IMG/VR virus record: IMGVR_UViG_3300030339_000003
Location: 167,367-231,366 of that record
Direction: 5' to 3' (one strand)
Length of the DNA stretch: 64,000 bases
Shown here: positions 41,260 through 64,000 of the stretch, piece by piece
How positions within the stretch are numbered: the stretch's first letter is position 1
Layout of the letters: each line of letters starts with the position of its first letter
Program-made: the position numbers and the translations under genes
The notes under the pieces: model-generated
What the model was told of the DNA's origin: nothing
Database searches by the model: none
The model's input: the letters and a program-made list of their open reading frames with translations, nothing else

Positions 41260-41279
41260 TTAATGATATAGGTCTGAAA
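41260..41279 (-). promoter_or_regulatory. Early promoter variant
   Basis: TTTCAGACCTATATCATTAA. Confidence 0.55.
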
Positions 41280-45001: not shown

Positions 45002-46627
45002 TTAAAAACTTACAGCGCCAGATTTATTACCTAGCATGATGCTAGACGTATTAGCTAAAATCTTAGCGGTGGCAAATGCGCCTTTCAAAGCAGTAATTGA
45101 TGCATAGGCGGTATCGTACACGCCCAGGTATTCAGGTGTTCCTTGTTTGGTTGTTGCTAAGTTGACGATTTCCTTATAGGCAAGCATGGCAGGGAAGTTC
45201 TGACCAAAATCAATTGTTGAATCATAAATGCCCATGTCTTTGGTCAGATGCAACCATTGTTCAAAACAGACTTTTACGAAATCAGCAATCAGTGGTTCGC
45301 GTTCATATTGTAACGCTACAGTAAATGCGGCTTTACGAAGTGCAGTACCACAGCCAGGCAAGATGCCGTTTTCCAATGCGGACCTGACAGCCAACACAAC
45401 GTCATCATAACGGTCTTTACGCTCTTTGATTTCGTTTGGTGTTTCACCGCCCACATACACGGTTACGATCTCACTACGAAGCGCATAGAGACGTTTCTGA
45501 GTAGCACGACCATACGGACTATAACGACGCTGCGCACCTAAAGACTCTAATGAATCTTCGATATGTTTAGCCCGCTCTTCAATCCGTAATTGTGTTTCTT
45601 CGTTCATGCTTTTGATAATGGTTTGGTTTAGACTACTGATAATAGTTTCTTTACAAACCGTTAAGGTTGTAGATTCCAAATCAGTGAAAGCCGGAACTGT
45701 TTCAGCGCCTAACACGGTGGCCACGTCACCCAGAATTGCAGTGCCGATAGAACCGCCAGTCGAAGTACGGAATACTACAAACTTTTTATCGCCATGTGAC
45801 TCAGACAATGCCTGGTTGGTACTCAGAACCAAACCGACAAAACGATTGTCAACATTAGGCGCAACTAACCCGATACGATTGTTTGGATAGGTTTTAGCCA
45901 GCAAACGTAATTGCGTGAAGACTACTGAATCAGTAAGAGAACCATCAATAATTAAATTACGGTTAATGACGGCAAATACCATATCGGTAAATTCCGTATC
46001 AGCACCATTACCAAACGTACTAAACACACCATCAGCCAGAGTCATATGAACTGAATGACCTTGGGACTCCATGATCTTATCCTGCGCGCTGGAAGATTCA
46101 TAAATTTCAACCATCGGGAAACGATCTTTGTTACGATAGATATCCAGAACGTTTTTGGTAATCCCGTCGTCCTGATTAGCTGTGGTCAACGCCATGTCAT
46201 ACAGACGTGCGTCGTCACGAGTCAGATCGATAGTATCCTTCTTCAGTTGCTCGATGGTTTGATGTACCAAATCTTCAATACGCTTAGTGCTAACAAAGCC
46301 AGGGTATTTCAACAACAGATCGTAAAAGTATTTCATAAGAAACACAGTTGTGGTTGTACCATCACCACATTCGTTTTCAGTTTTACGAGCCGCTTCTTCA
46401 ATGATGCGGTTAATGCGTTCAGCGTGAGCGTCGTCCATTTCTAGACAACCTGCTACTGTTGCACCATCTTTAGTGGTTTGAGTTGCTGTACCTTCGGCAT
46501 ACACTACCACATTACCATTGGGACCCATGGTAGAAGTCACAATTTCAAAAACAGTATTCACTGTATCGGTAATTACTTTGCGCGTTTCATCTTTACCCAA
46601 AGCTTTAGGGCGTGTAGTTAAAGTCAT
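45002..46627 (-). CDS. groEL: Phage GroEL-like chaperonin (EL gp146-like)
   Basis: STMGPNG, TTKDGATVA, GDGTTTT, VGGET..EIKERKDRYDD, GILPGCG. Confidence 0.95.
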   Translation of the reverse strand: MTLTTRPKALGKDETRKVITDTVNTVFEIVTSTMGPNGNVVVYAEGTATQTTKDGATVAGCLEMDDAHAERINRIIEEAARKTENECGDGTTTTVFLMKYFYDLLLKYPGFVSTKRIEDLVHQTIEQLKKDTIDLTRDDARLYDMALTTANQDDGITKNVLDIYRNKDRFPMVEIYESSSAQDKIMESQGHSVHMTLADGVFSTFGNGADTEFTDMVFAVINRNLIIDGSLTDSVVFTQLRLLAKTYPNNRIGLVAPNVDNRFVGLVLSTNQALSESHGDKKFVVFRTSTGGSIGTAILGDVATVLGAETVPAFTDLESTTLTVCKETIISSLNQTIIKSMNEETQLRIEERAKHIEDSLESLGAQRRYSPYGRATQKRLYALRSEIVTVYVGGETPNEIKERKDRYDDVVLAVRSALENGILPGCGTALRKAAFTVALQYEREPLIADFVKVCFEQWLHLTKDMGIYDSTIDFGQNFPAMLAYKEIVNLATTKQGTPEYLGVYDTAYASITALKGAFATAKILANTSSIMLGNKSGAVSF

Positions 46628-48253: not shown

Positions 48254-48273
48254 CTAATAATGTAGGTCTGAAA
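48254..48273 (-). promoter_or_regulatory. Early promoter variant
   Basis: TTTCAGACCTACATTATTAG. Confidence 0.5.
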
Positions 48274-50175: not shown

Positions 50176-51087
50176 TTATTTGTTTTTCTTAGCATGCTTT
50201 TTGATTTGACGAGAAGTCATGCGTGATTTTTGTTTGGCGGTAAGAGTAATCGATCTCGCCCATTTCTTAACATCAATTGTTCCTTCAGTGTCGTAAAACA
50301 CATCTGGAGTGGATTGTTTAGCTTTGGCGATAATGCTATCCAGGCAAGGAATTGAGTGAGAAAGAATCCCCCCAATGACACCAGCCGAATGTGTGAGTAA
50401 AGAACCGTCAAGAAACGATTTATCGCTTCGAATCGATAACCTTACATTTGAATCACGTGATAATAATTTATCAACCAAATCAAGTTCACCGGGTTTAATA
50501 GTTATGGTTCCTTCAGTTAACGGATTATAGTGCATCGAGTCCAACAAATCTTTTAACTTTGAAATCGATTCAGCGTTCCAAATGCTACCGTTAGCTTTAA
50601 AGATTTCATCCATTTGTCTACGAAGTATGATGAGATCTTCAACATCATTTTCATCTTTACCCAAATCGGACTTATGGAATTCAATAGCATCATTGATTGT
50701 TGCAAACACAATCCCCGATTCAAAGCGTGACACTACCTTTACACCAATGAATGGGTGGCGCTCACCCATTTCTACCTTGCGACGCAGAAGCCCTTCACTT
50801 TTACCGAAAGCCTCTTTACGTGCTTTTAATTCTTGTTCCGCAGTTTCAGCAATATTTAAACCATCGGGGGAAAGAAAAACGGGAGTTTCCAAACTGCTTT
50901 TATTAGAGCGCTCACGCATGCGCTCTGATAGACCATAATAGCGACTACTTTGTAAATTGGCGAGTGTTACCATTTCATCTGGAATGGTAAATCCATCCGA
51001 TTCCGGAGTATCAAAGATATCGTTCTTCAAACCTTTCTTATAATTGGGGTCACGCTTTAAGCTTACAGTCATGGAATAATTCCTCAA
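50176..51087 (-). CDS. Hypothetical protein with basic tail
   Basis: 303-aa ORF. Confidence 0.75.
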   Translation of the reverse strand: MRNYSMTVSLKRDPNYKKGLKNDIFDTPESDGFTIPDEMVTLANLQSSRYYGLSERMRERSNKSSLETPVFLSPDGLNIAETAEQELKARKEAFGKSEGLLRRKVEMGERHPFIGVKVVSRFESGIVFATINDAIEFHKSDLGKDENDVEDLIILRRQMDEIFKANGSIWNAESISKLKDLLDSMHYNPLTEGTITIKPGELDLVDKLLSRDSNVRLSIRSDKSFLDGSLLTHSAGVIGGILSHSIPCLDSIIAKAKQSTPDVFYDTEGTIDVKKWARSITLTAKQKSRMTSRQIKKHAKKNK

Positions 51088-51131
51088 AAAATATAAAGAA
51101 ATACTAAGGGCTCAAACGAGCCCTTAGCTTA

Positions 51132-52626: not shown

Positions 52627-52646
52627 CAAGTAATATAGGTCTGAAA
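52627..52646 (-). promoter_or_regulatory. Early promoter
   Basis: TTTCAGACCTATATTACTTG. Confidence 0.75.
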
Positions 52647-52662
52647 CCTTCTGTATTATAAA

Positions 52663-53190
52663 TTATTGCTTATCGATACTTACCGCAAAATCAGGTAGTA
52701 ATGCTTTGATTGCATTAAGTACAATCGTAGCATGCATGAGTTCGTCAATATAAATATTAACCAAATAATGCATGTGTTTATCTATGCCAACTAAACGTAA
52801 AGTGATGTATTGATCGGCATCAGTAAGTTTTTCATCATCAGCGATTAAAGCTAACGTTCTTTGTTCCTGGCCAGGACGATTAAACATGTGGCGTGGAGCA
52901 TTACTACTGGATGTCACGTAGCTAATATGACCCTTACAACTTAATCCTAGTGGGGCCGCTCTAGCCAATTCATGATACAGCTCCCAGGTATTAAAACGAT
53001 GATCGGTGAGTTCAGATAATTGACGTTCATTAATAATCGTTTCGGAATAGCCTTCATCAAACAAAGACATAAAGTTTATGCTTTCTTTAATTTCCCTGAT
53101 ACTTTTCCGTGTAGCTTTATTGGATTCAATACCAGCTAGTCGGTCGATAATTGTTTTTAATTGGTTAATTAAAAATTCTGATTCTTTCAT
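52663..53190 (-). CDS. Hypothetical protein
   Basis: 175 aa, AGGAG RBS. Confidence 0.75.
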   Translation of the reverse strand: MKESEFLINQLKTIIDRLAGIESNKATRKSIREIKESINFMSLFDEGYSETIINERQLSELTDHRFNTWELYHELARAAPLGLSCKGHISYVTSSSNAPRHMFNRPGQEQRTLALIADDEKLTDADQYITLRLVGIDKHMHYLVNIYIDELMHATIVLNAIKALLPDFAVSIDKQ

Positions 53191-53201
53191 GTTAGCTCCT
53201 T

Positions 53202-53666
53202 TTACTTTGGCGTAGAAATTGTTTGAACATCGTGCTGTAGTTTAGTTAACAAATCAACAGCATCAGAATTATGTTCAGCTCCCAATAAAAGTTTTACCAT
53301 CCCTAATACATCCGCTTTAGAATAGACAATGTATAAATTATTATCGTCGAATAATCCTTCTCTCCCGGATTCGTCAAATCCCAATGGATAGTCTTTTTGA
53401 TCCAAGTTATTTTTAAGATTATGCAAAATTTCTTCGTACGCTAATGCGGTAACCGTAAAACAGTCTTCGTTATATGCTGGATGGTCTTCTGGGATGTCGG
53501 TATTAATGCAATTTACGGGCTGATAAACAAAATCGATTTGTTCTTCTCCGTTTGACAATTTACAATGTATTGGGTTTGAACCAATGTCACAATAAGTTTT
53601 ATCAAAATAAGAAAAAATAGTTCCAGCGGGCAGTTTCTTAAAATCTTGATATTTATAAATTTTCAT
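53202..53666 (-). CDS. Conserved phage hypothetical protein
   Basis: MKI....F..LPAGT.F ... REGLFD..LY.VY pattern recalled from unrelated phage hypotheticals. Confidence 0.7.
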   Translation of the reverse strand: MKIYKYQDFKKLPAGTIFSYFDKTYCDIGSNPIHCKLSNGEEQIDFVYQPVNCINTDIPEDHPAYNEDCFTVTALAYEEILHNLKNNLDQKDYPLGFDESGREGLFDDNNLYIVYSKADVLGMVKLLLGAEHNSDAVDLLTKLQHDVQTISTPK

Positions 53667-53685
53667 GTTAAATTCCTTAAATAAA

Positions 53686-53713
53686 TATATCCTTACCTTA
53701 CGGTAAGGATATA
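53686..53713. terminator. Intrinsic terminator
   Basis: tatatccttacc-ttac-ggtaaggatata. Confidence 0.7.
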
Positions 53714-53833
53714 GAGTTAATCAATTTCTTTATGAGAACAATGGGGTTTGTTTATTACGCAAGATAATGTCATTGTTAATGATCTTGCGGTAATCTTTAG
53801 TATGGTCTTCGCCATACAGTAAGATCTTGTGCA

Positions 53834-54031
53834 TTATTTCCACCCCTTAGATAGTAGGTATATCCCGACAAAAGCAATAACCAAACCAACCATTACTACG
53901 GTAACAGATTTATAACTTTTACGATACCAACCAGGTTTAAAGTCAGTATGATCTTCATCGTAAATAAAGAAAGATATAAACATTAACCCTGCTGCTACAT
54001 ATAAAAGAATGTTGCCAATTTTGTCAGCCAT
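53834..54031 (-). CDS. Small two-TM membrane protein
   Basis: 65 aa, two hydrophobic helices. Confidence 0.7.
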   Translation of the reverse strand: MADKIGNILLYVAAGLMFISFFIYDEDHTDFKPGWYRKSYKSVTVVMVGLVIAFVGIYLLSKGWK

Positions 54032-54971
54032 TGGTATCGTCCGCGGTGGTTAAATCATTAGGAGTGTTTTCGGGCGTTGTTTGTGGGTGGTTTTTGTCAT
54101 AATAGTCAATGGCTAAACAAATTCTTTCATGCAATTCCATACACTTTTTGTATTCCTGAAGAAGTGTATCCGAGTCAACAACAGTTTTATTTTTTAGATA
54201 TGCATTTAAATTTAAAAATTTACTTAATAAAAATTCTTCTGGATGTTGCAAATCAGAAGGTTTTGCATAAGAGAACTTATCTGAATCAGCAAAACATCTC
54301 CCGTAATCATTAACAAACAATTGTCTGTTTTCATCCCAATCATTTAAATAATTAGGTAACGGGATATCAGCCGCTTTGTATTCTTCAAGTTTAGCGGGAC
54401 TGACATTTGGACCAATCATGTTTAAAACCAAATAATCTCTTAACCCAGGATTTATTCTTTCATAAACAATACGTTTGGTTAAATTCCACAATGGCGTGAT
54501 AATCGGTATCGGATGAACAGATAAACGAGACAACGGATTAACTGTAATTGGATAATGTTTTAATTCATCGTATTGTTTTTCAGTTAAGTCAGAATAATTA
54601 AGAGACGTTTCATAAGCATCTTCTTTTAACCATCCAGCGACAAAAACCACACTATTGTAAAATTCACGGCCTTGTGCGTCAGTTAACATACATGCAGTGC
54701 GAAACTGTTGGTTTACACGCAGAGATTTATTTTCACCTCTATGCGTGCCAAAAAACGACTTAGGAGAATAAACTAACCAAATACTCGCTTTTGGATAAAG
54801 TTCTGTTAATCGTTTATAAGCTCGATAAATTAATGACGCCTCATAAACTTCAGCTGCGCGACCATTAACACAACCATAAGTCAATTCAACGGCATAACCT
54901 TGTTCAATATACATTTGTGCTAAGTACATTGATTCAACACCGCCACTAAAGGCAACAATAGCCGTTTTCAT
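54024..54971 (-). CDS. QueC-like PP-loop adenylating enzyme
   Basis: AIVAFSGGVES, AGWLKED, IITPLWNLTK; no C-terminal Zn cysteine cluster. Confidence 0.7.
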   Translation of the reverse strand: MKTAIVAFSGGVESMYLAQMYIEQGYAVELTYGCVNGRAAEVYEASLIYRAYKRLTELYPKASIWLVYSPKSFFGTHRGENKSLRVNQQFRTACMLTDAQGREFYNSVVFVAGWLKEDAYETSLNYSDLTEKQYDELKHYPITVNPLSRLSVHPIPIITPLWNLTKRIVYERINPGLRDYLVLNMIGPNVSPAKLEEYKAADIPLPNYLNDWDENRQLFVNDYGRCFADSDKFSYAKPSDLQHPEEFLLSKFLNLNAYLKNKTVVDSDTLLQEYKKCMELHERICLAIDYYDKNHPQTTPENTPNDLTTADDTNG

Positions 54972-54972
54972 A

Positions 54973-55278
54973 TTACTTATCCTCTAAGTCTTTATTAAGT
55001 TTCTTTTCAGCAAAATCGATACAACTAAATATTTGTTTCTTTTCCAAACGTAAATTGGCAACAGTAGTATTTAATCGATTGCCGTTATTAACAGTTTCCC
55101 AGTAAATGGGAGATTCTATTTCAGTTACGTTTAGGTTTTCTAACTTTTCATTATTGCGAATGATGTCTTGTAATAATACGATAAGCTCACTATTAACCTT
55201 AACAAGATTTTTCTTCATTCGGTCAATATCGGCAATACGTTTAAGATGCTCTTGTTTGGTCATTATAACCACCAACAA
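54973..55278 (-). CDS. Coiled-coil hypothetical protein
   Basis: 101-aa ORF. Confidence 0.65.
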   Translation of the reverse strand: MLVVIMTKQEHLKRIADIDRMKKNLVKVNSELIVLLQDIIRNNEKLENLNVTEIESPIYWETVNNGNRLNTTVANLRLEKKQIFSCIDFAEKKLNKDLEDK

Positions 55279-55343
55279 TGAATGTGATTAAAAGGGCGCA
55301 GTTACCCACGCCCATTAAAATTACTGATGAGAGACTTAACTCT

Positions 55344-56180
55344 TTAAACTAAAGAAAATTTCTTTGCTTTAGTTGGGTTGGTCAGTAAAACGTAACCCGT
55401 CTTGACTGGGTTTTCGAAGTCTGTGTTATCACCTTCGAATACCATTACACGGCCTGTAGCCGTAATTACATAGTACGATACGTCTTCCTTCTTTTCTTTG
55501 TTGTAGTAGACATTAGCACGACGAACAATCAAACCACAATTGATCACCTTTTTAATATTGTCGTTAGTTGTTGTCTTGACCAAAGTGTAAGTAGTTTCTT
55601 TATGGACACCTTGTTTGATAGAGATCTTTTCTTTCTCTAACAGTTCTTTGACGAAGTCAGGTGTCAAAATAGGTGACATCGGACTAGTACCATGTGCAAT
55701 CATTGTGTTAGTCGCATAGTACGTTTGCATAACGCGATGCTTCATGCTTTCCAAGAACTGGTGACCGAATAACAACGGACGGTCAACACTGTGGTAATTG
55801 TCTTTCTTAAACAGTTGGGTGAAGGACACATTCCCGAAATCCATTTTTAACAGGATCTCTTTATTATCATTAGGAATAATGATAGAAGGCACCAGCAGTT
55901 TGTCAGTGATACCTTTCAACATCATAGAAGAAAGACGAGGCTTGCCGATAAAGCCAGTGTTATTACGGACCAGCTGGGTTGTTACTTGGATACGCATAAT
56001 GCCATCAGTCGCAGTTACTACGGACAATGAATCTGCGATCTTACCATCATCAAAGAAACCACCCACGTTATGCAGGTTATGATGGAAACAGACCAGATGC
56101 GCAACACCAGTTTTTGTTGTCATTGTTTTATTGCCTTTTGTTGTGGGATTAAGAAACTTTACAAGACTTAATATCATCAT
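55344..56180 (-). CDS. Hypothetical protein (likely start MTTKTG)
   Basis: Long ORF, AAAGG RBS. Confidence 0.7.
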   Translation of the reverse strand: MMILSLVKFLNPTTKGNKTMTTKTGVAHLVCFHHNLHNVGGFFDDGKIADSLSVVTATDGIMRIQVTTQLVRNNTGFIGKPRLSSMMLKGITDKLLVPSIIIPNDNKEILLKMDFGNVSFTQLFKKDNYHSVDRPLLFGHQFLESMKHRVMQTYYATNTMIAHGTSPMSPILTPDFVKELLEKEKISIKQGVHKETTYTLVKTTTNDNIKKVINCGLIVRRANVYYNKEKKEDVSYYVITATGRVMVFEGDNTDFENPVKTGYVLLTNPTKAKKFSLV

Positions 56181-56634
56181 AAGTCATGACACGAGCATGT
56201 ATTTTAGTACGACCGTTTAACGACGCTTTCATGATACGATTAAATCCATCTAATACTCTCCAACGTCCGTTGTGTCGGATAACTAAAATAGGGTATACTG
56301 TTTTTGCTGCCTCCACTTTTTCTTTAGTAATTGATGAAAATAACAAAGCGTGCATGACGTCCATAAGTGGGAAATCCACAATAGGTTTAACACTACCAGC
56401 GGCTCTTAATAATAGCGGTGAATATTTGTCGCCCAAAAACAAAACATTATCTTCAAGATTAAAGAATGTTTCACTTTTTGTTGGGTCAGACAACAGTGAC
56501 ATATGCAATTGGGCGAGTTCTTGAAGAGACATATTCTTTTCAGGTTCAATACCCAACCAAGTTACTTTGGAAATAATGTTACCATTACCTCTAACAATGT
56601 GACGAGCTTGATCTACTTTCTTTTCTTCTTGCAT
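56149..56634 (-). CDS. ParB/sulfiredoxin-like domain protein
   Basis: YPILV...WRVLDGFNRIMKA..G...IHARV. Confidence 0.75.
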   Translation of the reverse strand: MQEEKKVDQARHIVRGNGNIISKVTWLGIEPEKNMSLQELAQLHMSLLSDPTKSETFFNLEDNVLFLGDKYSPLLLRAAGSVKPIVDFPLMDVMHALLFSSITKEKVEAAKTVYPILVIRHNGRWRVLDGFNRIMKASLNGRTKIHARVMTYDDIKSCKVS

Positions 56635-56894
56635 GGATTGCCTCTGCGTTTACTGGAACATGTTGCTAATTTAGGTGGACGTAATGAAACAGGTTTACGG
56701 TAATAATGTTTTCTTTGAAGTCGAACTATTCCTTTAATGGCTTTACGAAATGAATTACCAATGTTTTTAACCGCCTGTTCTAAATCGGTTAGACCTTCAT
56801 CGACACTTGCAATACATTCTGCAATATAGGTATCGTCCCAATTTGCCTCTTCAACAATTATAAACTCTTCATCGAAATTAGTAACTTCGCCCAT
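56613..56894 (-). CDS. Small protein, acidic N-terminus and basic C-terminus
   Basis: GGAGG RBS before MGEVT (56894). Confidence 0.7.
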   Translation of the reverse strand: MGEVTNFDEEFIIVEEANWDDTYIAECIASVDEGLTDLEQAVKNIGNSFRKAIKGIVRLQRKHYYRKPVSLRPPKLATCSSKRRGNPCKKKRK

Positions 56895-56904
56895 AATGCC
56901 TCCA

Positions 56905-57336
56905 CTACCAACGTTTAGTTTTATTATTACCCATTTTAAAACGAGTAGGATGTAATTGACCCGTGTGTTGATCGAAATGCTTTCTTTTACCAGGCGCGTA
57001 TGATTGTAAACTTTGGCTGGTAGGTAAATTGATTTCCATAAGCTTAGCGCGCTCTTGGATATCACGATAGGTTTGTCGACCCATATGCTGGATTGTCTGG
57101 AGACTAGGTCCTGCGCCCAACACAACCGTTCTGGTAACATGTGGTTGTGAATGATGATATTGGAAATCTTTGAGTTCAGATTCTTTTACGCATACCACAT
57201 TAACCCGGATTTCGTTATCCAAACATTCTTTAAAGAAAGCTTCAGTGTTTGGAATTTGAACACCTTGTTCGTCAAACAAAACAACTTCATTAGTTATTTC
57301 ACTGGACGCCATAGTCACATTAACACTTTTGCACAT
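56905..57336 (-). CDS. Hypothetical protein ending KTKRW
   Basis: GGTGG RBS before MCKSV (57336). Confidence 0.7.
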   Translation of the reverse strand: MCKSVNVTMASSEITNEVVLFDEQGVQIPNTEAFFKECLDNEIRVNVVCVKESELKDFQYHHSQPHVTRTVVLGAGPSLQTIQHMGRQTYRDIQERAKLMEINLPTSQSLQSYAPGKRKHFDQHTGQLHPTRFKMGNNKTKRW

Positions 57337-57337
57337 A

Positions 57338-57748
57338 TTACCACCGTTTAGTTTTGCGATTAACATCTTTAAAGTATGTTTCATGAACCCACACTTTAGC
57401 TTGACGCTTGGCTGTTTTTTCAATGACTCGCTGACGTGGTTCCCACACAATAACAATGTCACTGTTATTCACAACGATCAACGTAAAGTTATCATCAACA
57501 TCATGATCGTCGATAAAGTCATTAACATCTTCAACTAACGCATCCAGGTCAATACGTTCTTTATGTGATATGTTAACTACGTTACCTGTTTTACGTTTGG
57601 TCATATCACCAGCAGACCATTCTTTTGAATGATAATTGAATACCATTCCACCAAATCCCACTGTACCAATTAGTGTGCTAAAATACACTGGAGATTCATC
57701 AGTCAAAAAATTATTGATGAAGTCTTTAAGCTTTTCACCTGGAGTCAT
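57338..57748 (-). CDS. Hypothetical protein ending KTKRW
   Basis: 136-aa ORF. Confidence 0.7.
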   Translation of the reverse strand: MTPGEKLKDFINNFLTDESPVYFSTLIGTVGFGGMVFNYHSKEWSAGDMTKRKTGNVVNISHKERIDLDALVEDVNDFIDDHDVDDNFTLIVVNNSDIVIVWEPRQRVIEKTAKRQAKVWVHETYFKDVNRKTKRW

Positions 57749-57753
57749 TTCAA

Positions 57754-58431
57754 TTACCCTTTAAAGTTGGTCGCAACATGATCTTTGACTGTTGACATTA
57801 ACAATGGTTTGTTATCTACAACTGAGATAATATTTTTAATAATATCTTTGTTTAATTCAAAACCAAATTCAGGATAAGAACTCCACATGTATCCTGTCTT
57901 TTCTGACAACTTGTCAACCAAATGATCAACAATTTCATTGACCAAATCTTCTTTACTAATAACTCCCCATGCAACTCTTGCTTTCATGCAGCGATCGATA
58001 AGGTCAGTAAGGTCTAATTTACCACGATCTGCTAAAGCTACGTATTCTGAATAGACAGAAGAGTGTACGCCTTTATAACTAGCACGGTGTTCATAACACG
58101 TTTTAGCGATCAACATGGTTTCTTGTTCATTAAACATTTTTGGTGCGTGAATGTCTAAATAACGGAAAGCTAAACCAAAAGAAATCTGGTGATGTGTTTC
58201 ACGATCATAACGGCAACCCAAATCGTGCATTAAACAACCTGCTAAAATAATACTAATTTCTTTTTTAGTAAACTTACCTGCAGCTAATTCCAAACCATAC
58301 GCGCATACATTATAAACATGGTCTACATTATGCGCGGGATCATTACACTTCACGCTAACATAACACGCTTCAATTAAACCCGCTGGTAAATAAGTACCTA
58401 ATAAATCATGATAGTTTTTTGACGATTTCAT
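57754..58431 (-). CDS. HD-domain metal-dependent phosphohydrolase
   Basis: AHNVDHV, LMHDLG, HHQ, YEHR, ALADRG. Confidence 0.88.
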   Translation of the reverse strand: MKSSKNYHDLLGTYLPAGLIEACYVSVKCNDPAHNVDHVYNVCAYGLELAAGKFTKKEISIILAGCLMHDLGCRYDRETHHQISFGLAFRYLDIHAPKMFNEQETMLIAKTCYEHRASYKGVHSSVYSEYVALADRGKLDLTDLIDRCMKARVAWGVISKEDLVNEIVDHLVDKLSEKTGYMWSSYPEFGFELNKDIIKNIISVVDNKPLLMSTVKDHVATNFKG

Positions 58432-58471
58432 TCTATTCTCTTCTTAAAAATATAAAGGTTACCAATACTAA

Positions 58472-58491
58472 TTGATAATATAGATTTAAAA
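58472..58491 (-). promoter_or_regulatory. Early promoter variant upstream of HD gene
   Basis: TTTTAAATCTATATTATCAA. Confidence 0.55.
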
Positions 58492-58543: not shown

Positions 58544-59716
58544 GTGAGCAAGTTGATTAATCTTTTAACGGATCCCGTGCTGTACAACGGTAAAACATTA
58601 TACCCTTCTCAAAAGAGCAAATTGGATGCTCTGACTGGTGATGATTTTACTGTTTCTAATTTACAAAATATAGATTATTACAATAATGGTTATCAAGCGG
58701 ATTTAATTACAACCGACGGGTTCGTTAGAGCTTCCGCTCAAAAGTGGAATTCCGCCATTCCTGTTAATTTAAAGAATGTGCAAACAAATGGTGTTGCGGG
58801 TAACTTATTGGATTGTATCCAACAACCGTCAAATGCTATTACTTACACTATTGACGGCAATGTAAAGAACGTATATATTTGTGTGGTTGATGGTGCCGAT
58901 GACGCTCAAGTATTAGCAGGGTTACAAACAGGATTGGGGATCGCATTAACTACAGATGATTATACATTATCTACCCCAGCAGCTAATACACCTAATTATC
59001 GTAAAGTTGTTTTTAAATCACCATATTTAGTTGGAAATGTGTATGTTGTTTCTACACGTTTTGAAAGCGCCATATTTGTTACTTTACCAAATCTTAATAT
59101 TGGGCGGGTCACGTACACCGCCACGCAACAAACTCCTTCAGTAGATAAACTTACTGTAGCCTCGGCATTAGCTTGGAATGCTTATTATGCGTCATGGAAT
59201 TCAACTGTCAGTTTAGAAGACATGACTAACCGTTTATCTGGCAATATGTACAACCAATTAGTATTCTTTAATGAACTATATACGTTATATAGTGGCGGCA
59301 CAGGCAATACTTATTTTAATTGTAAAAACGGTTTAATTGACGGCTCCAATACTTGGGGTTATAATAAGTTGACTTACACTGTTTCATTATTTGCTGATTC
59401 TGATTGGTTTGATTTTATTCCTTTAAGCAATTTAGACGACCTAGCGACTATGGATAAAGAAGGTTTTTATTCGGTAGCCGATCAATCCACATTTAAGTTT
59501 TGGTTAATGGTTGATGCAAATTCTGGTGCAATTAACACCATGTTGAACAAACATAGTGAAAAGATTTATTTCATGCCAGAAGACTACGATTTTAGTATTA
59601 GTGGCTCTGGTGATAATGGAATTCCGCAACCAACTTATAAGTATCGTGGTCGCTTTACAATGACCAATGCAATTATGCAAGACGGTTCAATATATGTAAG
59701 ATGGATTGGTGAATAA
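58544..59716 (+). CDS. Probable virion structural protein
   Basis: N-terminal ~170 aa homologous to 43430..44074; Asn/Thr/Tyr-rich C-terminal extension. Confidence 0.5.
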   Translation: MSKLINLLTDPVLYNGKTLYPSQKSKLDALTGDDFTVSNLQNIDYYNNGYQADLITTDGFVRASAQKWNSAIPVNLKNVQTNGVAGNLLDCIQQPSNAITYTIDGNVKNVYICVVDGADDAQVLAGLQTGLGIALTTDDYTLSTPAANTPNYRKVVFKSPYLVGNVYVVSTRFESAIFVTLPNLNIGRVTYTATQQTPSVDKLTVASALAWNAYYASWNSTVSLEDMTNRLSGNMYNQLVFFNELYTLYSGGTGNTYFNCKNGLIDGSNTWGYNKLTYTVSLFADSDWFDFIPLSNLDDLATMDKEGFYSVADQSTFKFWLMVDANSGAINTMLNKHSEKIYFMPEDYDFSISGSGDNGIPQPTYKYRGRFTMTNAIMQDGSIYVRWIGE

Positions 59717-59763: not shown

Positions 59764-60657
59764 TTATAGTTGTAATTCAAATACAACACAAGTCATTGTA
59801 TTTGTTGTTGTTGTCATGTTCCATGTGCCGCCAACATTATTATTATTTGCTATTGCCGACATAGCCAATGGTGTGCTAGCTGCTTTATAATTTCCTGCAA
59901 TTATCCATGGGCTTCCTGATGGCAATGACAATACCAAATCTGAACATTTTGGAATATCAAATTGTAAAGAACGTAATCCCGACATGGTTGCAAATAACGC
60001 TGCCATTTCTGATTTTGCATAAGTATCGTCAAAATTAGTTAGCAGACCGTTACTTCCGGTAATGAATTCACCAAAGGGATTTATTTCGGTGGTGAACTTA
60101 TTGGTGACGTAAGGAAATCTGGCAAGGTAATTAAAGTCATTTAAAGAAACAATTACCCCGTTCGTCACCCTGTCTGTTCCAGCGGCAGGAAATAACTTAC
60201 TCATCACATTAACGGCGTAACCCTGACAATAATAAGAATTAGCAAAATAAATAATACGTCCGTTTATAATCCATTTAAACCATTTAAGTGGGTTTGTGTA
60301 GGGCGGAGGTCCCGCTATCGCTCTTACATCGGTATACGATGGAAGTAATGAAGCATCTACCTCACCAAAATACCCAACTTCCCAATCACCCCTAATTGGA
60401 ACGGCGTTACCGGGTCCTGCATTTGGGAAGTTAGCCAGCGGGATAACAATAGAAGATCCGGTACTTTCATTCAGTGTATTTAATACTTTATAAAAATATA
60501 CCGTATTATCCAAAGCCGAGGTGTCTATATATGAAGTTGTTCCGTGCTCGATAGTTGCTAATGTATTAAACGTGCCATTTCTTGTATCGCTTCGCTGTAC
60601 GATGACTACCTCTTCAGGGTCAAAAACATGCTCAAGCCAATTAACAATAATAGACAT
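59764..60657 (-). CDS. phiKZ gp131-like tail/baseplate protein, subtype A
   Basis: FN3-like N-domain, GPG..RGDW.GYFGEV, WFKWIINGRIIYF, PYVTNKFTT. Confidence 0.75.
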   Translation of the reverse strand: MSIIVNWLEHVFDPEEVVIVQRSDTRNGTFNTLATIEHGTTSYIDTSALDNTVYFYKVLNTLNESTGSSIVIPLANFPNAGPGNAVPIRGDWEVGYFGEVDASLLPSYTDVRAIAGPPPYTNPLKWFKWIINGRIIYFANSYYCQGYAVNVMSKLFPAAGTDRVTNGVIVSLNDFNYLARFPYVTNKFTTEINPFGEFITGSNGLLTNFDDTYAKSEMAALFATMSGLRSLQFDIPKCSDLVLSLPSGSPWIIAGNYKAASTPLAMSAIANNNNVGGTWNMTTTTNTMTCVVFELQL

Positions 60658-60659
60658 AA

Positions 60660-61598
60660 TTAACTCGCTGGTAAAAGTTCCACAATAGGTAAAATAACAC
60701 CAGCTGAAAGAGTATTTGTTGACAACATCATACTGTCAACCCATTGTCCGCCAGTAACTTGTAAAGTTATTACTTTAGCATTGCTTTCCACAAAAGTATT
60801 AGTAAAATAGTTTTGTGCAGCAAAAGTACTCAAAGCAAAATCATGAAAACGCATGTGGTCGCTAACACTTAATGCGTCGACACCTTGTTGTATCGTTTTA
60901 ATGAAAGCCATAAGCTCAGCTTTAGCAAATGTACTGCCTGGATTAATGATAACACCTGTTGATGTATTCGCAGTGATATCATTATTAGGGTTTTGTTCCG
61001 TGGTAACTAATGTAGAAGCGTAAGGTAAACGTGCTAAGAAATTGTAACTACCAACAGTTACCTTGGCTCCATTTGCAATACGATCAGCACCAGCAGCAAC
61101 AAATAATTTCCCAGAAGATATTCCCGGATTACTGGTTACAATACCCGCTGTCATTGATGTCCCAAAGACATTGTTTGGAATAAAAACAATTCTTCCCCCA
61201 ATAATCCATTTAGCCCAAGTAGTCGGAGAAGCTACAGGGGTAGGGGTAATATTGGCAGCAGTTTTGATTTGCGCCCACGTAGGTAATAAAGCGGCAGCTA
61301 CTTCACCGAATAACCCGAATTCCCAATCCCCACGCAGTATTGTAGTTGGGCCCGGCCCAATGTTTGTCACGTTACGCATTGGTATTACGTTAGAATAAGC
61401 AACGTCTGTTCCAATAGCGGCATCAACACGATAAAAATAAAGAGTATCGTTAAGCGCGGTATTATCGGTGATTGACGTTACGCTGCCCGCTACTGAGTCT
61501 ATTAATGTAGTGGGTCCGTTTCTTGTAGTGCTTCGATATATTCTGATGTTGTCTAAAGCAGCAGAATTACGATTTGACCATTTGATTGTAATAGCCAT
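60660..61598 (-). CDS. phiKZ gp131-like protein, subtype B
   Basis: Same motifs; IYRSTTRNGP, PYASTLVTT..NPNNDIT. Confidence 0.75.
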   Translation of the reverse strand: MAITIKWSNRNSAALDNIRIYRSTTRNGPTTLIDSVAGSVTSITDNTALNDTLYFYRVDAAIGTDVAYSNVIPMRNVTNIGPGPTTILRGDWEFGLFGEVAAALLPTWAQIKTAANITPTPVASPTTWAKWIIGGRIVFIPNNVFGTSMTAGIVTSNPGISSGKLFVAAGADRIANGAKVTVGSYNFLARLPYASTLVTTEQNPNNDITANTSTGVIINPGSTFAKAELMAFIKTIQQGVDALSVSDHMRFHDFALSTFAAQNYFTNTFVESNAKVITLQVTGGQWVDSMMLSTNTLSAGVILPIVELLPAS

Positions 61599-61606
61599 AT
61601 GTTACC

Positions 61607-62530
61607 TTAAAGTAATAATTCGTATACCGGTAAAAACGAACAAGGATCGCCCGACAAAATGCGCTGAGCGTATACTTCTTGAATGCTTTGACTGTTGCTG
61701 CCACCAGGCATTGCTGTTTTGTACTGGTCCACGTAAGTGTTTGTTAACCAATAAGTCACGTTATTTCGAAAATTAAATGCAGTGTCATTAACTTTATAAC
61801 CTTTACTTAATTTTGGTGTAGTGACGGATTGGCCAGAAAACGTGTTTTGTATGGCTTGTATTTCAGATTTGGTGATTGTATCATCATTGACGTCTAGATA
61901 AGTTCCCGACCCCGTTACAAATTCACCATTTGGGTTTAATTCCGTTGTGAATTTATTTGTAGCATATGGGCATCTAATTAAAAAATTAAATCCATTTAAA
62001 GGAATTGTAACGCCATTAGCAATACGATCACTACCTGCCGGATAAATAAACATTTTACCCAAAGTGTTATATGCGCCAGACACATCATAATTATAAAACG
62101 TAAAGGGGAAGAAAATAATTCTTCCGTTTACTATCCACTTAAACCACGTACTGGCGTTGTTTGTAGTACCGTCTGAACTTACACCAGTAGCATTTTTTAT
62201 CATGGTAAAGGTGGGTAAGTCAGCAGGCAATACTGGACCAAAATAACCGAATTCCCAGTCCCCACGAATAATACTAGCGGGACCAGGACCACTGTTTGGA
62301 AAATTAGCAGCGGGCACTATTAACGATTGACCGGTATCATTGCCTACGATGTTTTCTATTTGATAAAAATAAACTTTATTATTGACCGCCGTAGTGTCTT
62401 CATAAGTTAACAAAGTCCCGTCTAAAGTAGCTAGTAAGATATAAGTTCCCTTACGTTGATCACTACGCCACACTTTAATGCTATCGGGTGTGGCTGTTCG
62501 TAACGGCAACCAATTAATAGTAATAGACAT
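61607..62530 (-). CDS. phiKZ gp131-like protein, subtype A
   Basis: ANFPNSGPG, PYATNKFTTELNPNGEF. Confidence 0.75.
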   Translation of the reverse strand: MSITINWLPLRTATPDSIKVWRSDQRKGTYILLATLDGTLLTYEDTTAVNNKVYFYQIENIVGNDTGQSLIVPAANFPNSGPGPASIIRGDWEFGYFGPVLPADLPTFTMIKNATGVSSDGTTNNASTWFKWIVNGRIIFFPFTFYNYDVSGAYNTLGKMFIYPAGSDRIANGVTIPLNGFNFLIRCPYATNKFTTELNPNGEFVTGSGTYLDVNDDTITKSEIQAIQNTFSGQSVTTPKLSKGYKVNDTAFNFRNNVTYWLTNTYVDQYKTAMPGGSNSQSIQEVYAQRILSGDPCSFLPVYELLL

Positions 62531-62539
62531 AATTACGCC

Positions 62540-63421
62540 TTAAATAAGCAATTCAAGAATAGGCCAAAACATTGATCCGGAATCCATAGCTAGTGCAAAT
62601 CCAACAGTAAACCCAGACCCATTACGAAGAGTATTCATAGGTCCAACACCCAGTATTCGTGTTGAATCGTACCACGTGTTGGTCATGAGGTATTGCGCAA
62701 TGCCTCCGGAAGACATATCACCCATTCGATTAGGTAAAAAAATACCTGTTTGATCTTCAATGGTAGAACTTGCTATTAAAGCTCCGACTTCGGATTTTGC
62801 TATGGTCGGCTCTAATTTATCGAGCGTAATATCGTTATCTGGATTTACCCCCGTAGTCGTTTTAATGCTGGCATAAGGGCAACGCACCCCATAATAAAAC
62901 CCATTCTTTTCAACTCGCACCATAGAAGTAGGATCCGAGTTAGCAGAGAGTAAAATTCCTTTAGTATTACCGGGAGTGAAATTGGTATAATAGAAATTAT
63001 CTGGAATAAATATAATCTTCCCATTAACAACCCATTTATACCATTTCGTGGGGTTAAGTCCGGTTGCCGTAATTGTACCAGCTGCCGCAATATCACCAAA
63101 GGTTGGTAGATTATCTAAAATAACCTCACCAAACGTTCCAAACTCCCAATCTCCTCGCTTTATACGGTTATCTCCAGGACCTTGAAACGGATAGTTAGCC
63201 ATCGGTATAATGTTGGATAAAGATTCGTCAGAACCAATTACAGAACCTACACGATAAAAATAAATTTTGTAATTATCCGCGGTGTTATCAGTGTATGTTA
63301 ACAAATTACCAGCAATTGTGTCAATAAGAGTTAAAGGACCATTACGGGTATTACTGCGATAAATTTTAATAGCATCTAAAACTGCGGTATTATTATTCAG
63401 CCACTTTATTGTAACGGTCAT
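62540..63421 (-). CDS. phiKZ gp131-like protein, subtype B
   Basis: IYRSNTRNGP, PYASIKTTT..NPDNDIT. Confidence 0.75.
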   Translation of the reverse strand: MTVTIKWLNNNTAVLDAIKIYRSNTRNGPLTLIDTIAGNLLTYTDNTADNYKIYFYRVGSVIGSDESLSNIIPMANYPFQGPGDNRIKRGDWEFGTFGEVILDNLPTFGDIAAAGTITATGLNPTKWYKWVVNGKIIFIPDNFYYTNFTPGNTKGILLSANSDPTSMVRVEKNGFYYGVRCPYASIKTTTGVNPDNDITLDKLEPTIAKSEVGALIASSTIEDQTGIFLPNRMGDMSSGGIAQYLMTNTWYDSTRILGVGPMNTLRNGSGFTVGFALAMDSGSMFWPILELLI

Positions 63422-63444
63422 TTAAATATCCCTTATGACATCAT

Positions 63445-64000
63445 TTAAAATTGCAATTCAAGAATAGGCCACCAAATAAAACGAGTCGTTACGCCATTGG
63501 TTGCAATAACGGTAGTTCCTGGACTAACCAAATCTTCTGTTTTAAATAACAGAGTGTCTGTAATATAAGTATTAGAAATGATACCTTGACTTACGCTAGT
63601 CACGTCATAGTCAGAAAACTTTTGTCCGTTAAGTTCAGCTATCAGAGCCATGTTCCGAACAATTGATGCAAGAATAGCACCCATTTCGGTTTTAGTCATG
63701 TCAGTGTCATATTGAGTAATAACATTATTTTCGTCTACCGCAAACAATCCTCCCGCATTAACAGCGGTCGTGAATTTATTTGTAGCATATGGGGAACGGA
63801 TTAAGAATTGATAATCCCCCTTATTTACAATATTTGCGGATGTTGCAGGGTCGGCTCCAGCTGGAAGAACAGCCGTACCAATGCCCGAACTTCCAGACCC
63901 AAATAAACTATTATAAGAATAGTAGTTATTTGGAATAAAAATAATGCGACCGTTAACAACCCATTTCAGCCATGTATCCATTGTACCGATTTGGTTTATA
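63445..64000 (-). CDS. phiKZ gp131-like protein, subtype A (5' truncated by window edge)
   Basis: Frame open to the edge; WLKWVVNGRIIF, PYATNKFTT, WWPILEL. Confidence 0.75.
   Translation of the reverse strand, partial: INQIGTMDTWLKWVVNGRIIFIPNNYYSYNSLFGSGSSGIGTAVLPAGADPATSANIVNKGDYQFLIRSPYATNKFTTAVNAGGLFAVDENNVITQYDTDMTKTEMGAILASIVRNMALIAELNGQKFSDYDVTSVSQGIISNTYITDTLLFKTEDLVSPGTTVIATNGVTTRFIWWPILELQF

What the first reader, a model, noticed from the sequence alone, without database searches (positions are those of the whole stretch)
52663..58491. Early operon combining HD hydrolase, ParB-like and QueC-like PP-loop enzymes: candidate nucleotide/modification module
Seen: one promoter variant (58472) heads a co-oriented run of HD hydrolase, three basic-tailed proteins, a ParB/Srx protein, two unknowns, a QueC-like enzyme and a membrane protein. 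Known: PP-loop+ParB pairs occur together in IbrAB/YbdMN and phosphorothioate-type modification systems, and HD enzymes degrade nucleotide signals. Inference: this could be an uncharacterised early counter-defence or tRNA/protein/nucleotide-modifying system. No folE/queD/queE/dpdA is present in the window, so classical 7-deazaguanine DNA modification is not supported. Caveat: weak hairpins at ~55290 and 53686 may split the unit.
Basis: partly seen in the sequence, partly recalled or inferred. Interest (0 to 1): 0.6.

Follow-up and report, generated by a model that had tools for sequence, protein, structure and literature searches.

The report
Early jumbo-phage operon of unlinked enzymes

Summary
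A conserved chimallivirus-type early promoter (58475-58490, minus strand) heads eleven co-oriented genes down to 52663, and the next promoter copy lies at 52630-52645.

- **Domain calls.** The HD protein is a YedJ/YpgQ-like phosphohydrolase with all its metal ligands. The 161-aa protein has a ParB/Srx-type core. The 315-aa protein is a PP-loop ATP pyrophosphatase whose nearest folds are Cap9, QueC, YcfA and QatC.
- **Not QueC proper.** It lacks the zinc cysteines and the substrate motifs of QueC. The whole 231-kb genome has no preQ0 or TGT genes.
- **The three-enzyme module is not supported.**
  - Close relatives (one contig and two further metagenome runs) lack exactly the PP-loop gene but keep the HD and ParB-like genes.
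  - In phages Miami, Wellington and AerS_266 the HD and PP-loop genes lie 94-152 kb apart.
  - In EL the ParB-like gene is about 124 kb from the PP-loop gene.
  - EL-like phages do keep an HD-family gene 2-5 kb from the PP-loop gene, but that copy has lost every catalytic residue.
- **Operon structure.** Two conserved terminator-like hairpins split the run into three sub-units.

Best reading: a mosaic early accessory operon of functionally independent genes. No transcript data exist, and the PP-loop substrate is unknown.

The parts
58475..58490 (-). Chimallivirus-type early (virion RNA polymerase) promoter-like motif; variant with core TATATTAT
   Evidence: 9 copies in the window against 0.5 expected, all minus strand. 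Conserved upstream of the HD gene in L003, L004, L005 and L007. Matches the published consensus for 201phi2-1, OBP, N1M2, EL and phiKZ (PMC7058600 Table 2).
57754..58431 (-). HD-domain metal-dependent phosphohydrolase, 225 aa (phrog_3921; YedJ/YpgQ-like)
   Evidence: phrog_3921 at E 8.5e-43. Pfam HD at E 0.002, below the cut-off. Many homologues carry PF01966. Profile A3 hits YedJ 3gw7 at 8e-7, 2pq7 at 2e-6 and YpgQ 5dqv at 2e-3. H34, H38, H69, D70, H80, H81, H115 and D135 are invariant.
57338..57748 (-). 136-aa protein of unknown function with a basic C-terminal tail ...KTKRW
   Evidence: 84-95% identical in L003 and L004. The tail motif is shared with the next gene and with the L006 and L007 homologues. 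No family match.
56905..57366 (-). 153-aa protein of unknown function with the same C-terminal ...KTKRW tail
   Evidence: Start set by L003 and L004. Only the last 16 residues resemble the 136-aa protein.
56613..56894 (-). 93-aa protein with an acidic N-terminal part and a very basic Cys-containing C-terminal tail
   Evidence: Homologues lie immediately upstream of the ParB-like gene in L003, L004, L006 and L007.
56149..56634 (-). 161-aa protein with a ParB/Srx-type core in residues ~80-161 (phrog_17560; motif P-I-L-V...W-R-V-L-D-G-F-N-R)
   Evidence: phrog_17560 at 7.5e-11. Profile A4 hits SbnI 6nr6 at 7e-4 and ParB 4umk at 0.13. Atlas neighbours include ParB_N and 'ParB-like nuclease' clusters. 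The AF2 model is poor, pLDDT 45. No Pfam ParB_N match.
55344..56180 (-). 278-aa protein of unknown function (phrog_32984)
   Evidence: E 1.5e-15. No Pfam, NCBIfam or Atlas lead. Absent from L007 and L006 between the ParB-like and PP-loop genes.
55294..55313 (-). Terminator-like hairpin followed by TTTT, between the 278-aa and 96-aa genes
   Evidence: Conserved in L003 and L004, with a compensatory stem change in L003.
54973..55263 (-). 96-aa predicted coiled-coil protein; its stop lies one base before the PP-loop start
   Evidence: In L004 it is joined directly to the membrane-protein gene.
54024..54971 (-). 315-aa PP-loop ATP pyrophosphatase with a QueC-like fold (motif SGGVES) and a unique helical C-terminal part; no zinc site
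   Evidence: AF2 pLDDT 83.6. VIA Z: Cap9 13.3, QueC 12.8 and 12.4, YcfA 12.3, QatC 11.9, ThiI 11.9, LarE 10.8. Atlas and BFVD neighbours are viral QueC-annotated clusters. Only 31 relatives among 1.84 billion representatives. For conserved residues.
53834..54031 (-). 65-aa membrane protein with two hydrophobic helices; its start overlaps the PP-loop stop by 8 nt
   Evidence: Conserved in L003 and L004.
53686..53713 (-). Terminator-like 12-bp hairpin followed by a T-run
   Evidence: Stem conserved and loop variable in L003 and L004.
53202..53666 (-). 154-aa accessory gene (phrog_11827), absent from L003, L004, X4 and X5
   Evidence: Joint 53184->53661.
52663..53190 (-). 175-aa protein of unknown function, last gene before the next promoter
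   Evidence: No family match.
52630..52645 (-). Next early promoter copy (full consensus, core TATATTAC); marks the downstream end of the unit
   Evidence: Identical in L003 and L004.

Best explanation
The interval is one promoter-delimited early transcription block of an EL-related jumbo phage (231 kb, from a peat metagenome; it also encodes a GroEL-like chaperonin). The block is a mosaic of accessory genes, not a dedicated pathway. Its three enzymes most likely act independently.

(a) The HD protein is a metal-dependent nucleotide phosphohydrolase of the YedJ/YpgQ type. It is nearly universal in this phage group. It probably hydrolyses (d)NTPs or a related nucleotide early in infection (inferred).

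(b) The 161-aa protein carries a small ParB/Srx-type nucleotide-binding core (inferred from profile and motif).

(c) The 315-aa protein is a stand-alone PP-loop ATP pyrophosphatase built on the QueC scaffold. By the chemistry of that superfamily it should adenylate a carboxylate or carbonyl oxygen, which ammonia or an amine then replaces. No conserved cysteine is available for sulfur transfer or zinc binding. Its substrate is not 7-carboxy-7-deazaguanine in any recognisable way. It is dispensable in nature.

Transcription probably starts at 58475-58490 and is attenuated at two conserved hairpins. This gives three sub-units: HD to the 278-aa gene; the 96-aa gene, PP-loop and membrane protein; and the 154- and 175-aa genes.

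Shown: gene content, promoter family, folds and motifs, indels and linkage patterns. Inferred: timing, termination and all enzyme activities.
For: - Promoter family and its match to published early promoters.
- Early motifs in these phages mark virion-RNAP promoters: PMC7598289.
- HD. YpgQ chemistry: PMC8177086.
- ParB/Srx.
- PP-loop fold.
- Independence of the three enzymes:
  - An exact 939-nt absence of the PP-loop gene in L004, and the same joint 54036->54977 in runs X4 and X5 from two studies.
  - HD to PP-loop distances of 94 kb in Miami, 112 kb in Wellington and 152 kb in AerS_266.
  - EL ParB-like gp075 at 85.7 kb against PP-loop gp200 at 209.4 kb.
  - Very different phyletic spread.
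- Other gene-sized indels in the same block: the 154-aa gene, a 205-aa gene in L003, a 170-aa gene in L004, and a swapped N-terminal half of the ParB-like protein.
- Hairpins.
Against: - Within the window's own clade the ParB-like and PP-loop genes stay close. They are adjacent in L006, one gene apart in L007 and two genes apart here.
- An HD-family gene lies 2-5 kb from the PP-loop gene in EL, nine EL-like isolates and 8 of 10 IMG/VR loci. On the PP-loop tree, 11 of 13 informative loci have it nearby.
- No transcript data exist for this phage, so timing and operon structure are untested.
- No activity has been measured for any member of the three families in these phages.
Confidence: 0.6

Rival explanations
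1. The ParB/Srx-like protein and the PP-loop enzyme form a two-component modification system, working like IbrAB, YbdMN or DndBC. The ParB-like protein would bind a nucleic acid or nucleotide and the PP-loop enzyme would activate it with ATP. The intervening small genes would be accessories.
For: The two genes are adjacent in L006, one gene apart in L007 and two genes apart in the window and L003. ParB/Srx paired with PP-loop is a known theme (my own knowledge of IbrAB and DndBC; not tested here).
Against: - L004, X4 and X5 keep the ParB-like gene but lack the PP-loop gene.
- EL separates the two by about 124 kb, or about 87 kb around the circle.
- Miami has the PP-loop gene and no detectable ParB-like gene.
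- The PP-loop protein has no PAPS-reductase signature, and its best folds are QueC-type.
- The co-folding job gave no answer, which counts neither way.
Confidence: 0.15
2. The HD hydrolase and the PP-loop enzyme cooperate in nucleotide metabolism. The HD protein would turn (d)NTPs into (d)NMPs, and the PP-loop enzyme would then aminate or otherwise modify a base, as GMP synthetase, QueC and YcfA act on purine derivatives.
For: HD-family and PP-loop genes are 2-5 kb apart on the same strand in two deeply diverged clades, despite different gene order. In EL and L009 the PP-loop gene abuts thymidylate kinase. YcfA, a top structural hit, binds GTP.
Against: - All EL-clade phrog_3921 members have lost the H...HD...H...H...D residues, so there is no hydrolase to cooperate with in that clade.
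- The genes are 94-152 kb apart in three other genera.
- HD is present in about ten times more phages than the PP-loop gene.
- The PP-loop gene is deleted in close relatives that keep HD.
- The window phage's thymidylate kinase is 67 kb away.
Confidence: 0.1
3. The PP-loop protein is a true QueC that makes preQ0 for 7-deazaguanine modification of DNA or tRNA, using host-supplied precursors.
For: QueC is among the top structural matches (Z 12.8 and 12.4). Homologues in isolates are auto-annotated as QueC, for example in AerS_266, Noxifer and RSF1.
Against: - No Pfam QueC match.
- The zinc motif C(x)8CxxCxxC and the YxQxHxxE, VPxRN and YPDC motifs that define QueC (PMC13329287) are absent from the protein and from the family alignment.
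- The genome has no FolE, QueD, radical-SAM/QueE or TGT/DpdA gene.
Confidence: 0.03

Closest known systems
QueC-family PP-loop enzymes: QueC, Cap9 (type IV CBASS), QatC (QatABCD), YcfA
   Same: N-terminal PP-loop (SGGxES here, SGGxDS in QueC). Same Rossmann-type core over about 170-190 residues (Z 12-13, rmsd about 3 A). Conserved P-L-W...K element corresponding to the family lysine.
   Different: No zinc-binding cysteines and none of the QueC substrate motifs. An extra helical C-terminal part of about 110 residues with no match. No TGT, CD-NTase or QatB-like partner identified. Below every Pfam cut-off. ThiI and LarE score within 1-2.5 Z units, so the QueC assignment is by fold ranking only.
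IbrA/IbrB, YbdM/YbdN and DndC/DndB (PAPS-reductase-type PP-loop enzyme with a ParB/Srx partner)
   Same: A ParB/Srx-like gene and a PP-loop gene in one co-oriented cluster in the window's clade.
   Different: The PP-loop enzyme is not of the PAPS-reductase type. The pair is not conserved: the PP-loop gene is lost in L004, the two are unlinked in EL, and the ParB-like gene is absent in Miami. No cysteine desulfurase or other Dnd component is present.
YedJ (E. coli) and YpgQ (B. subtilis) HD-domain phosphohydrolases
   Same: Profile match over the catalytic core (E 8e-7 and 2e-3). H...HD...D ligands conserved. YpgQ is a Mn-dependent (d)NTP pyrophosphohydrolase (PMC8177086).
   Different: The phage family also keeps two further histidine positions (H80/H81 and H115). 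This fits the extended motif that PMC8177086 links to dinuclear sites. Substrate unknown; only about 20% identity.
Early operons of phiKZ-like (chimallivirus) jumbo phages driven by the virion RNA polymerase
   Same: An AT-rich conserved motif with core TATATTAC/T preceded by TTTCARR, repeated about 20 times on one strand ahead of runs of small genes.
   Different: No transcription start sites have been mapped for this phage. The copy at 58475-58490 departs from the consensus on both flanks.

Membership tests
PP-loop ATP pyrophosphatase superfamily (adenine nucleotide alpha hydrolases) | N-terminal SGGxDS-type pyrophosphate-binding loop | tested here: met
   SGGVES at residues 9-14. S9, G11 and S14 are invariant or nearly so in 30 family members, with E or D at the fifth position. 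The loop aligns to LarE, TilS and Cap9.
PP-loop ATP pyrophosphatase superfamily (adenine nucleotide alpha hydrolases) | Rossmann-like alpha/beta core shared with solved members | tested here: met
   AF2 model at pLDDT 83.6. 158 chains at Z >= 8; the listed top 50 are all PP-loop-type enzymes.
QueC (PF06508), canonical 7-cyano-7-deazaguanine synthase | Pfam model above the gathering score | tested here: not met
   No Pfam hit for the window protein and none in the six-frame genome search. 9 of 30 family members hit QueC only weakly, best E 2.3e-5.
QueC (PF06508), canonical 7-cyano-7-deazaguanine synthase | C-terminal zinc site C(x)8CxxCxxC | tested here: not met
   No conserved cysteine in alignment A1. 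Motif definition from PMC13329287.
QueC (PF06508), canonical 7-cyano-7-deazaguanine synthase | Substrate motifs YxQxHxxE, VPxRN and YPDC | tested here: not met
   Absent from the protein and from the family consensus. The family has its own motifs instead: N-x-x-Q-Q-F, G-W-x-K-E-D and P-L-W-x-x-x-K.
QueC (PF06508), canonical 7-cyano-7-deazaguanine synthase | Genomic company of the preQ0 pathway or a transglycosylase (FolE, QueD, QueE, TGT/DpdA) | tested here: not met
   No match to PF01227, PF01242, PF04055 or PF01702 in the complete 231-kb genome.
IbrA/DndC-type PP-loop enzyme paired with a ParB/Srx protein | PP-loop enzyme of the PAPS-reductase family (PF01507) | tested here: not met
   No PF01507 hit on the protein. 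The only genome hit is weak, at another locus. PAPS reductases are not among the top structural matches.
IbrA/DndC-type PP-loop enzyme paired with a ParB/Srx protein | Conserved adjacency of the two genes across genomes | tested here: not met
   Near each other only in the window's clade. Broken in L004, X4, X5, EL and Miami.
ParB/Srx superfamily | Core strand-turn-strand-helix with a D-G-x-H-R-type motif; match to known members | tested here: inconclusive
   - The motif is V-L-D-G-F-N-R here and D-G-[FVW]-H-R in L007, L006 and EL.
- Profile hit to SbnI at E 7e-4 and to ParB at 0.13.
- Atlas structural neighbours at TM 0.52-0.56.
- Against: no PF02195 match, and my own model had pLDDT 45.
HD-domain metal-dependent phosphohydrolases (PF01966) | H...HD...D metal ligands and a match to the family | tested here: met
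   The ligands are invariant in 25 homologues. The window protein scores 18.7 bits, below the cut-off of 22, but 14 of 24 homologues carry PF01966. The profile hits YedJ at 8e-7.
Chimallivirus early (virion RNA polymerase) promoters | Repeated AT-rich consensus around TATATTAC upstream of co-oriented early gene runs | tested here: met
   Published consensus.
Chimallivirus early (virion RNA polymerase) promoters | Transcription start about 10 nt downstream, active early in infection | not testable with these tools
   No RNA run holds this phage.

The most novel reading that the evidence does not exclude
The zinc-less QueC-fold enzyme (a family seen almost only in chimallivirus-type jumbo phages; 31 representatives among 1.84 billion clusters) may be a phage-encoded ATP-dependent ligase. 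It would attach a small molecule to a protein or nucleotide, as Cap9 and QatC do in bacterial immunity. It might act with the tightly coupled 96-aa and 65-aa membrane proteins of its sub-operon, and might serve host takeover or counter-defence.
Probability: 0.12. Interest if true: 0.7.

Novelty: new member of a known kind. Interest (0 to 1): 0.3.

Why it matters
For the scan, this stops a plausible-looking 'modification module' from being carried forward: co-orientation under one early promoter in a jumbo phage is not evidence of a shared pathway.

What remains of interest is narrower. It is a rare, phage-restricted branch of the QueC scaffold that has lost the zinc site and every deazaguanine-binding motif. 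The QueC fold has recently been shown to perform protein-nucleobase conjugation in CBASS type IV and QatABCD defence (PMC13329287; 10.1101/2025.04.06.647259). A phage-borne, remodelled version is therefore a reasonable target for biochemistry. Cultured phages carry homologues: EL gp200, Miami gp102 and the AerS_266 protein.

The catalytically dead HD-family proteins of EL-like phages, kept beside that gene, are a small puzzle of their own.

Tried and rejected
- **DNA search of the phage collection.** A megablast of the interval found nothing. The phage has no close sequenced isolate.
- **First IMG/VR scan.** A scan with the single PP-loop protein found nothing. The alignment-based scan worked.
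- **Single-sequence searches of solved structures.** HD and PP-loop gave nothing, and ParB-like gave only noise. Profiles were needed.
- **ParB-like structure prediction.** With only 4 sequences it gave pLDDT 45. I did not use it for a fold search.
- **Co-folding of PP-loop with ParB-like.** The verdict was 'no answer' (scores 0.35, 0.00, 0.01). This counts neither for nor against binding.
- **The 278-aa protein.** The Atlas search gave no usable lead.
- **PADLOC.** It gave only weak, probably coiled-coil, hits on the 96-aa and 175-aa proteins. I do not take these as evidence of a defence link.
- **Synteny with EL and Miami by gene size.** EL gp198-gp200 and Miami gp100-gp103 resemble the 278-96-315-65 aa run in gene lengths. 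Only the PP-loop protein, and one downstream 140-aa protein in Miami, show sequence similarity.
- **Rules followed.** No alternative genetic code was used.

Full report
**What the window is**

The window is the last 64 kb of a complete 231,366-bp virus record with terminal repeats. Its DNA is held almost entirely by two peat-metagenome runs. No sequenced phage is close at the DNA level.

Protein matches place it among the phiKZ/EL-type jumbo phages with their own RNA polymerases. The HD protein matches RisingSun, Goslar, Miami/KPN8 and SPN3US-like phages at 30-43% identity. The PP-loop protein matches Miami and EL. The window also encodes a GroEL-like chaperonin at 45002-46627, a hallmark of EL.

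Three metagenomic relatives were recovered:
- L003: 84-97% amino-acid identity.
- L004/L005: 60-100% amino-acid identity.
- L007, a 231,898-bp contig, and L006: 40-48% identity.

**The observation**

On the minus strand a motif of the form TTYARANYTATATTAY occurs nine times in the window, always on that strand. Shuffles give 0.5 expected. Genome-wide, 29 of 32 TATATTAY cores are on the minus strand, and about twenty share a longer consensus. This consensus is the one published for predicted early promoters of 201phi2-1, OBP, N1M2, EL and phiKZ (PMC7058600 Table 2). In phages where it has been tested, such motifs are the virion-RNA-polymerase early promoters (PMC7598289).

One copy, a variant on both flanks, lies at 58475-58490 and is conserved upstream of the HD gene in L003, L004/L005 and L007. 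The next copy lies at 52630-52645.

Comparison with L003 and L004 fixes eleven genes in the interval. It shortens two ORFs that the raw ORF list shows as overlapping: 185 aa becomes 153 aa, and 175 aa becomes 93 aa.

The 'basic tails' are real:
- The 136- and 153-aa proteins share only a 16-residue C-terminal motif ending KTKRW. The motif recurs in L006 and L007 and nowhere else in the genome.
- The 93-aa protein ends in a conserved, cysteine-containing, very basic tail.

The 65-aa protein has two hydrophobic helices.

Terminator-like hairpins followed by T-runs lie at 55313-55294 and 53713-53686. Both are conserved. The first carries a compensatory stem change in L003. The second keeps its stem while its loop varies.

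**The three enzymes**

*HD protein.* It belongs to phrog_3921 (E 8.5e-43). Its Pfam HD score is just under the cut-off, but most homologues carry PF01966. In 25 homologues, H34, H38, H69-D70, H80-H81, H115 and D135 are invariant. A profile of them matches E. coli YedJ (8e-7), 2pq7 and B. subtilis YpgQ (2e-3). YpgQ is a Mn-dependent (d)NTP pyrophosphohydrolase. The extended H...HD...H...H...D pattern is the one associated with dinuclear sites (PMC8177086).

*ParB-like protein.* It belongs to phrog_17560. Its conserved C-terminal half carries the pattern P-I-L-V...W-R-V-L-D-G-F-N-R. A profile matches the ParB/Srx domain of SbnI (7e-4) and a ParB (0.13). ESM-Atlas neighbours include ParB_N and 'ParB-like nuclease' clusters. 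My own model was too poor to use, and Pfam ParB_N does not match. I therefore rate this assignment as probable, not proven.

*PP-loop protein.* It has no Pfam hit and only 31 relatives among 1.84 billion cluster representatives. The family alignment shows an invariant PP-loop (S-G-G-x-E/D-S) and its own motifs. With that alignment AlphaFold2 gives pLDDT 83.6.

Structural comparison puts QueC-type enzymes first:

| Match | Z |
|---|---|
| Cap9 | 13.3 |
| QueC | 12.8 and 12.4 |
| YcfA | 12.3 |
| QatC | 11.9 |
| ThiI | 11.9 |
| LarE | 10.8 |

(All; Foldseek agrees.) ThiI ties with QatC, and LarE follows. Atlas and BFVD neighbours are mostly viral QueC-annotated clusters and jumbo-phage proteins from Miami, Wellington, Noxifer and RSF1.

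Measured against the published QueC signature (PMC13329287), only the P-loop and the conserved lysine are present. The zinc cysteines and the YxQxHxxE, VPxRN and YPDC motifs are absent. The complete genome lacks FolE, QueD, radical-SAM/QueE, TGT/DpdA and any Pfam QueC. 'QueC-like' should be read as a fold, not a function.

**Are the three a module?**

Evidence against a module:
1. In L004, a close relative (HD 96%, neighbours 85-96% identical), the 96-aa gene runs straight into the membrane-protein gene. Exactly window positions 54038-54976, the PP-loop gene, are missing, at a short GATA microhomology.
2. The same joint (54036->54977) appears in contigs of two further runs from two studies (X4, X5). 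One of these may share a study with L004. The HD and ParB-like genes are retained there.
3. HD and PP-loop genes are far apart in three genera: 93.6 kb in Miami, 112 kb in Wellington and 152 kb in AerS_266.
4. In EL the ParB-like gene (gp075, beside the DnaB-like helicase) is about 124 kb from the PP-loop gene gp200. Miami has no detectable ParB-like gene.
5. tblastn finds the HD family in 154 phage records, the PP-loop family in 14-21 and the ParB-like family in 6.
6. The block is generally fluid. The 154-aa gene is absent from L003, L004, X4 and X5. L003 has an extra 205-aa gene and L004 an extra 170-aa gene. The N-terminal half of the ParB-like protein is replaced in L004 and X5.

Evidence for some linkage:
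1. In the window's clade the 93-aa, ParB-like and PP-loop genes stay together. In L006 the ParB-like and PP-loop genes are adjacent, and in L007 they are one gene apart. This clade is broadly syntenic, so the signal is weak.
2. In EL the order is gp200 (PP-loop), gp201 (thymidylate kinase), gp001, gp002, gp003, and gp003 is a clear phrog_3921 member (E 5.5e-46). The same 2-5 kb spacing holds in nine EL-like isolates whose records start elsewhere, and in 8 of 10 IMG/VR loci. On a PP-loop tree, 11 of 13 informative loci have an HD-family gene nearby.
3. However, every EL-clade copy has lost the histidine and aspartate ligands. Whatever keeps the genes together there, it is not HD catalysis.

Counting genera, the two genes are linked in two (with opposite order) and unlinked in three. 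I read this as remnants of an ancestral neighbourhood, not a functional couple. A structural or regulatory tie is not excluded. The co-folding test of PP-loop with ParB-like gave no verdict.

**How it most likely works**

Inferred: the virion RNA polymerase starts at 58475-58490 early in infection. Transcripts are partly stopped at the two hairpins. This gives graded expression of three groups:
- HD, the three basic-tailed proteins, ParB-like and the 278-aa protein.
- The 96-aa protein, PP-loop and membrane protein. These are tightly packed: a one-base gap and an 8-nt overlap.
- The 154- and 175-aa proteins.

The HD enzyme probably hydrolyses (d)NTPs or a nucleotide signal. The PP-loop enzyme, by superfamily chemistry, adenylates an oxygen of its substrate for replacement by ammonia or an amine. 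The absence of conserved cysteines argues against sulfur transfer. Its substrate is unknown.

**Comparison and novelty**

The HD and ParB/Srx proteins are ordinary members of large superfamilies. The operon is a typical chimallivirus early block.

The PP-loop protein is a divergent, phage-restricted branch of the QueC scaffold. Homologues in isolates are already deposited, as 'Rossmann fold-containing protein' or, wrongly, as QueC. It matches none of the clusters described in the text I read of PMC13329287. I did not check its supplementary tables.

I rate the finding as a new member of known kinds, of modest interest. There is a low-probability but attractive possibility that the enzyme is a phage counterpart of the protein-conjugating QueC relatives.

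**Limits**

- No RNA data exist for this phage.
- No biochemistry exists for any of these phage families.
- The linkage survey covers five genera plus metagenomic loci, not the whole family.
- The ParB/Srx call rests on profile and motif evidence only.

Noticed in passing
window 57338-57385 and 56905-56952 (C-termini of the 136- and 153-aa proteins); L006:36-542; L007:6051-6494: Two adjacent, otherwise unrelated proteins end in the same 16-residue motif (h-x-T-x-F-K-x-x-N-x-K-T-K-R-W). It is conserved in relatives at 40-50% identity and found nowhere else in the genome. It could be a shared docking or targeting peptide.
   Followed up: partly
window 56613-56894; L006:551-877; L007:7088-7354: The 93-aa protein has a variable acidic N-terminal part and a conserved basic tail (R-K-H-Y-Y-R ... 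P-P-K ... C-S-S-[KR]-R-R-G-x-x-C-K-K-x-R-K). In every relative seen, its gene sits immediately upstream of the ParB-like gene.
   Followed up: partly
L010:1201-1881 (EL gp003) and the phrog_3921 genes of L012, L014, L015, L017, L019, L020, L021: All EL-clade members of the HD family phrog_3921 lack the H...HD...H...H...D residues (for example L-E-T in place of H-D-L), yet they are conserved and kept 2-5 kb from the PP-loop gene. They are probable pseudoenzymes.
   Followed up: partly
window 58544-59716 (+): A 390-aa plus-strand gene with no PHROG match sits between the tail-fibre-like genes and the HD promoter. L004 lacks it entirely. L003 keeps only the first ~20 nt of it in a 278-nt spacer. 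It is a recent gain here or a loss there.
   Followed up: partly
window 59764-63999 (-): At least five tandem paralogous genes of about 300 aa (30-47% identical to each other) match virion or tail-fibre-like PHROGs (phrog_1062, phrog_3589). L003 has six such genes, with different pairwise identities.
   Followed up: partly
window 45002-46627 (-): A GroEL-like chaperonin (phrog_5725, E 1e-113), as in Pseudomonas phage EL. L007 also carries a Cpn60 gene downstream of the same block.
   Followed up: no
window 56390-56613; L004:2260-2500; run X5: The N-terminal half of the ParB-like protein is replaced in L004 and X5 (60% overall identity against 85-96% for flanking genes; 236 unrelated letters in X5). 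The ParB/Srx core is nearly invariant.
   Followed up: partly
window 50176-51087 (-): A 303-aa gene (TTG start) is absent from L003, where only short remnants of its two ends remain as 40- and 38-aa ORFs. A strong bidirectional hairpin lies at 51103-51128 just upstream.
   Followed up: no
L002:7124-7771 (EL gp201) and L009:7320-7994: In EL-like phages the PP-loop gene directly abuts a thymidylate kinase gene. In the window's genome the thymidylate kinase is 67 kb away (G000 153794-154276).
   Followed up: partly
window 41263-41278 and 48257-48272 (-): Two further one-mismatch copies of the early promoter motif (cores TATATCAT and TACATTAT; the latter is like the published EL consensus). They suggest more early units in the 43-58 kb minus-strand run.
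   Followed up: no
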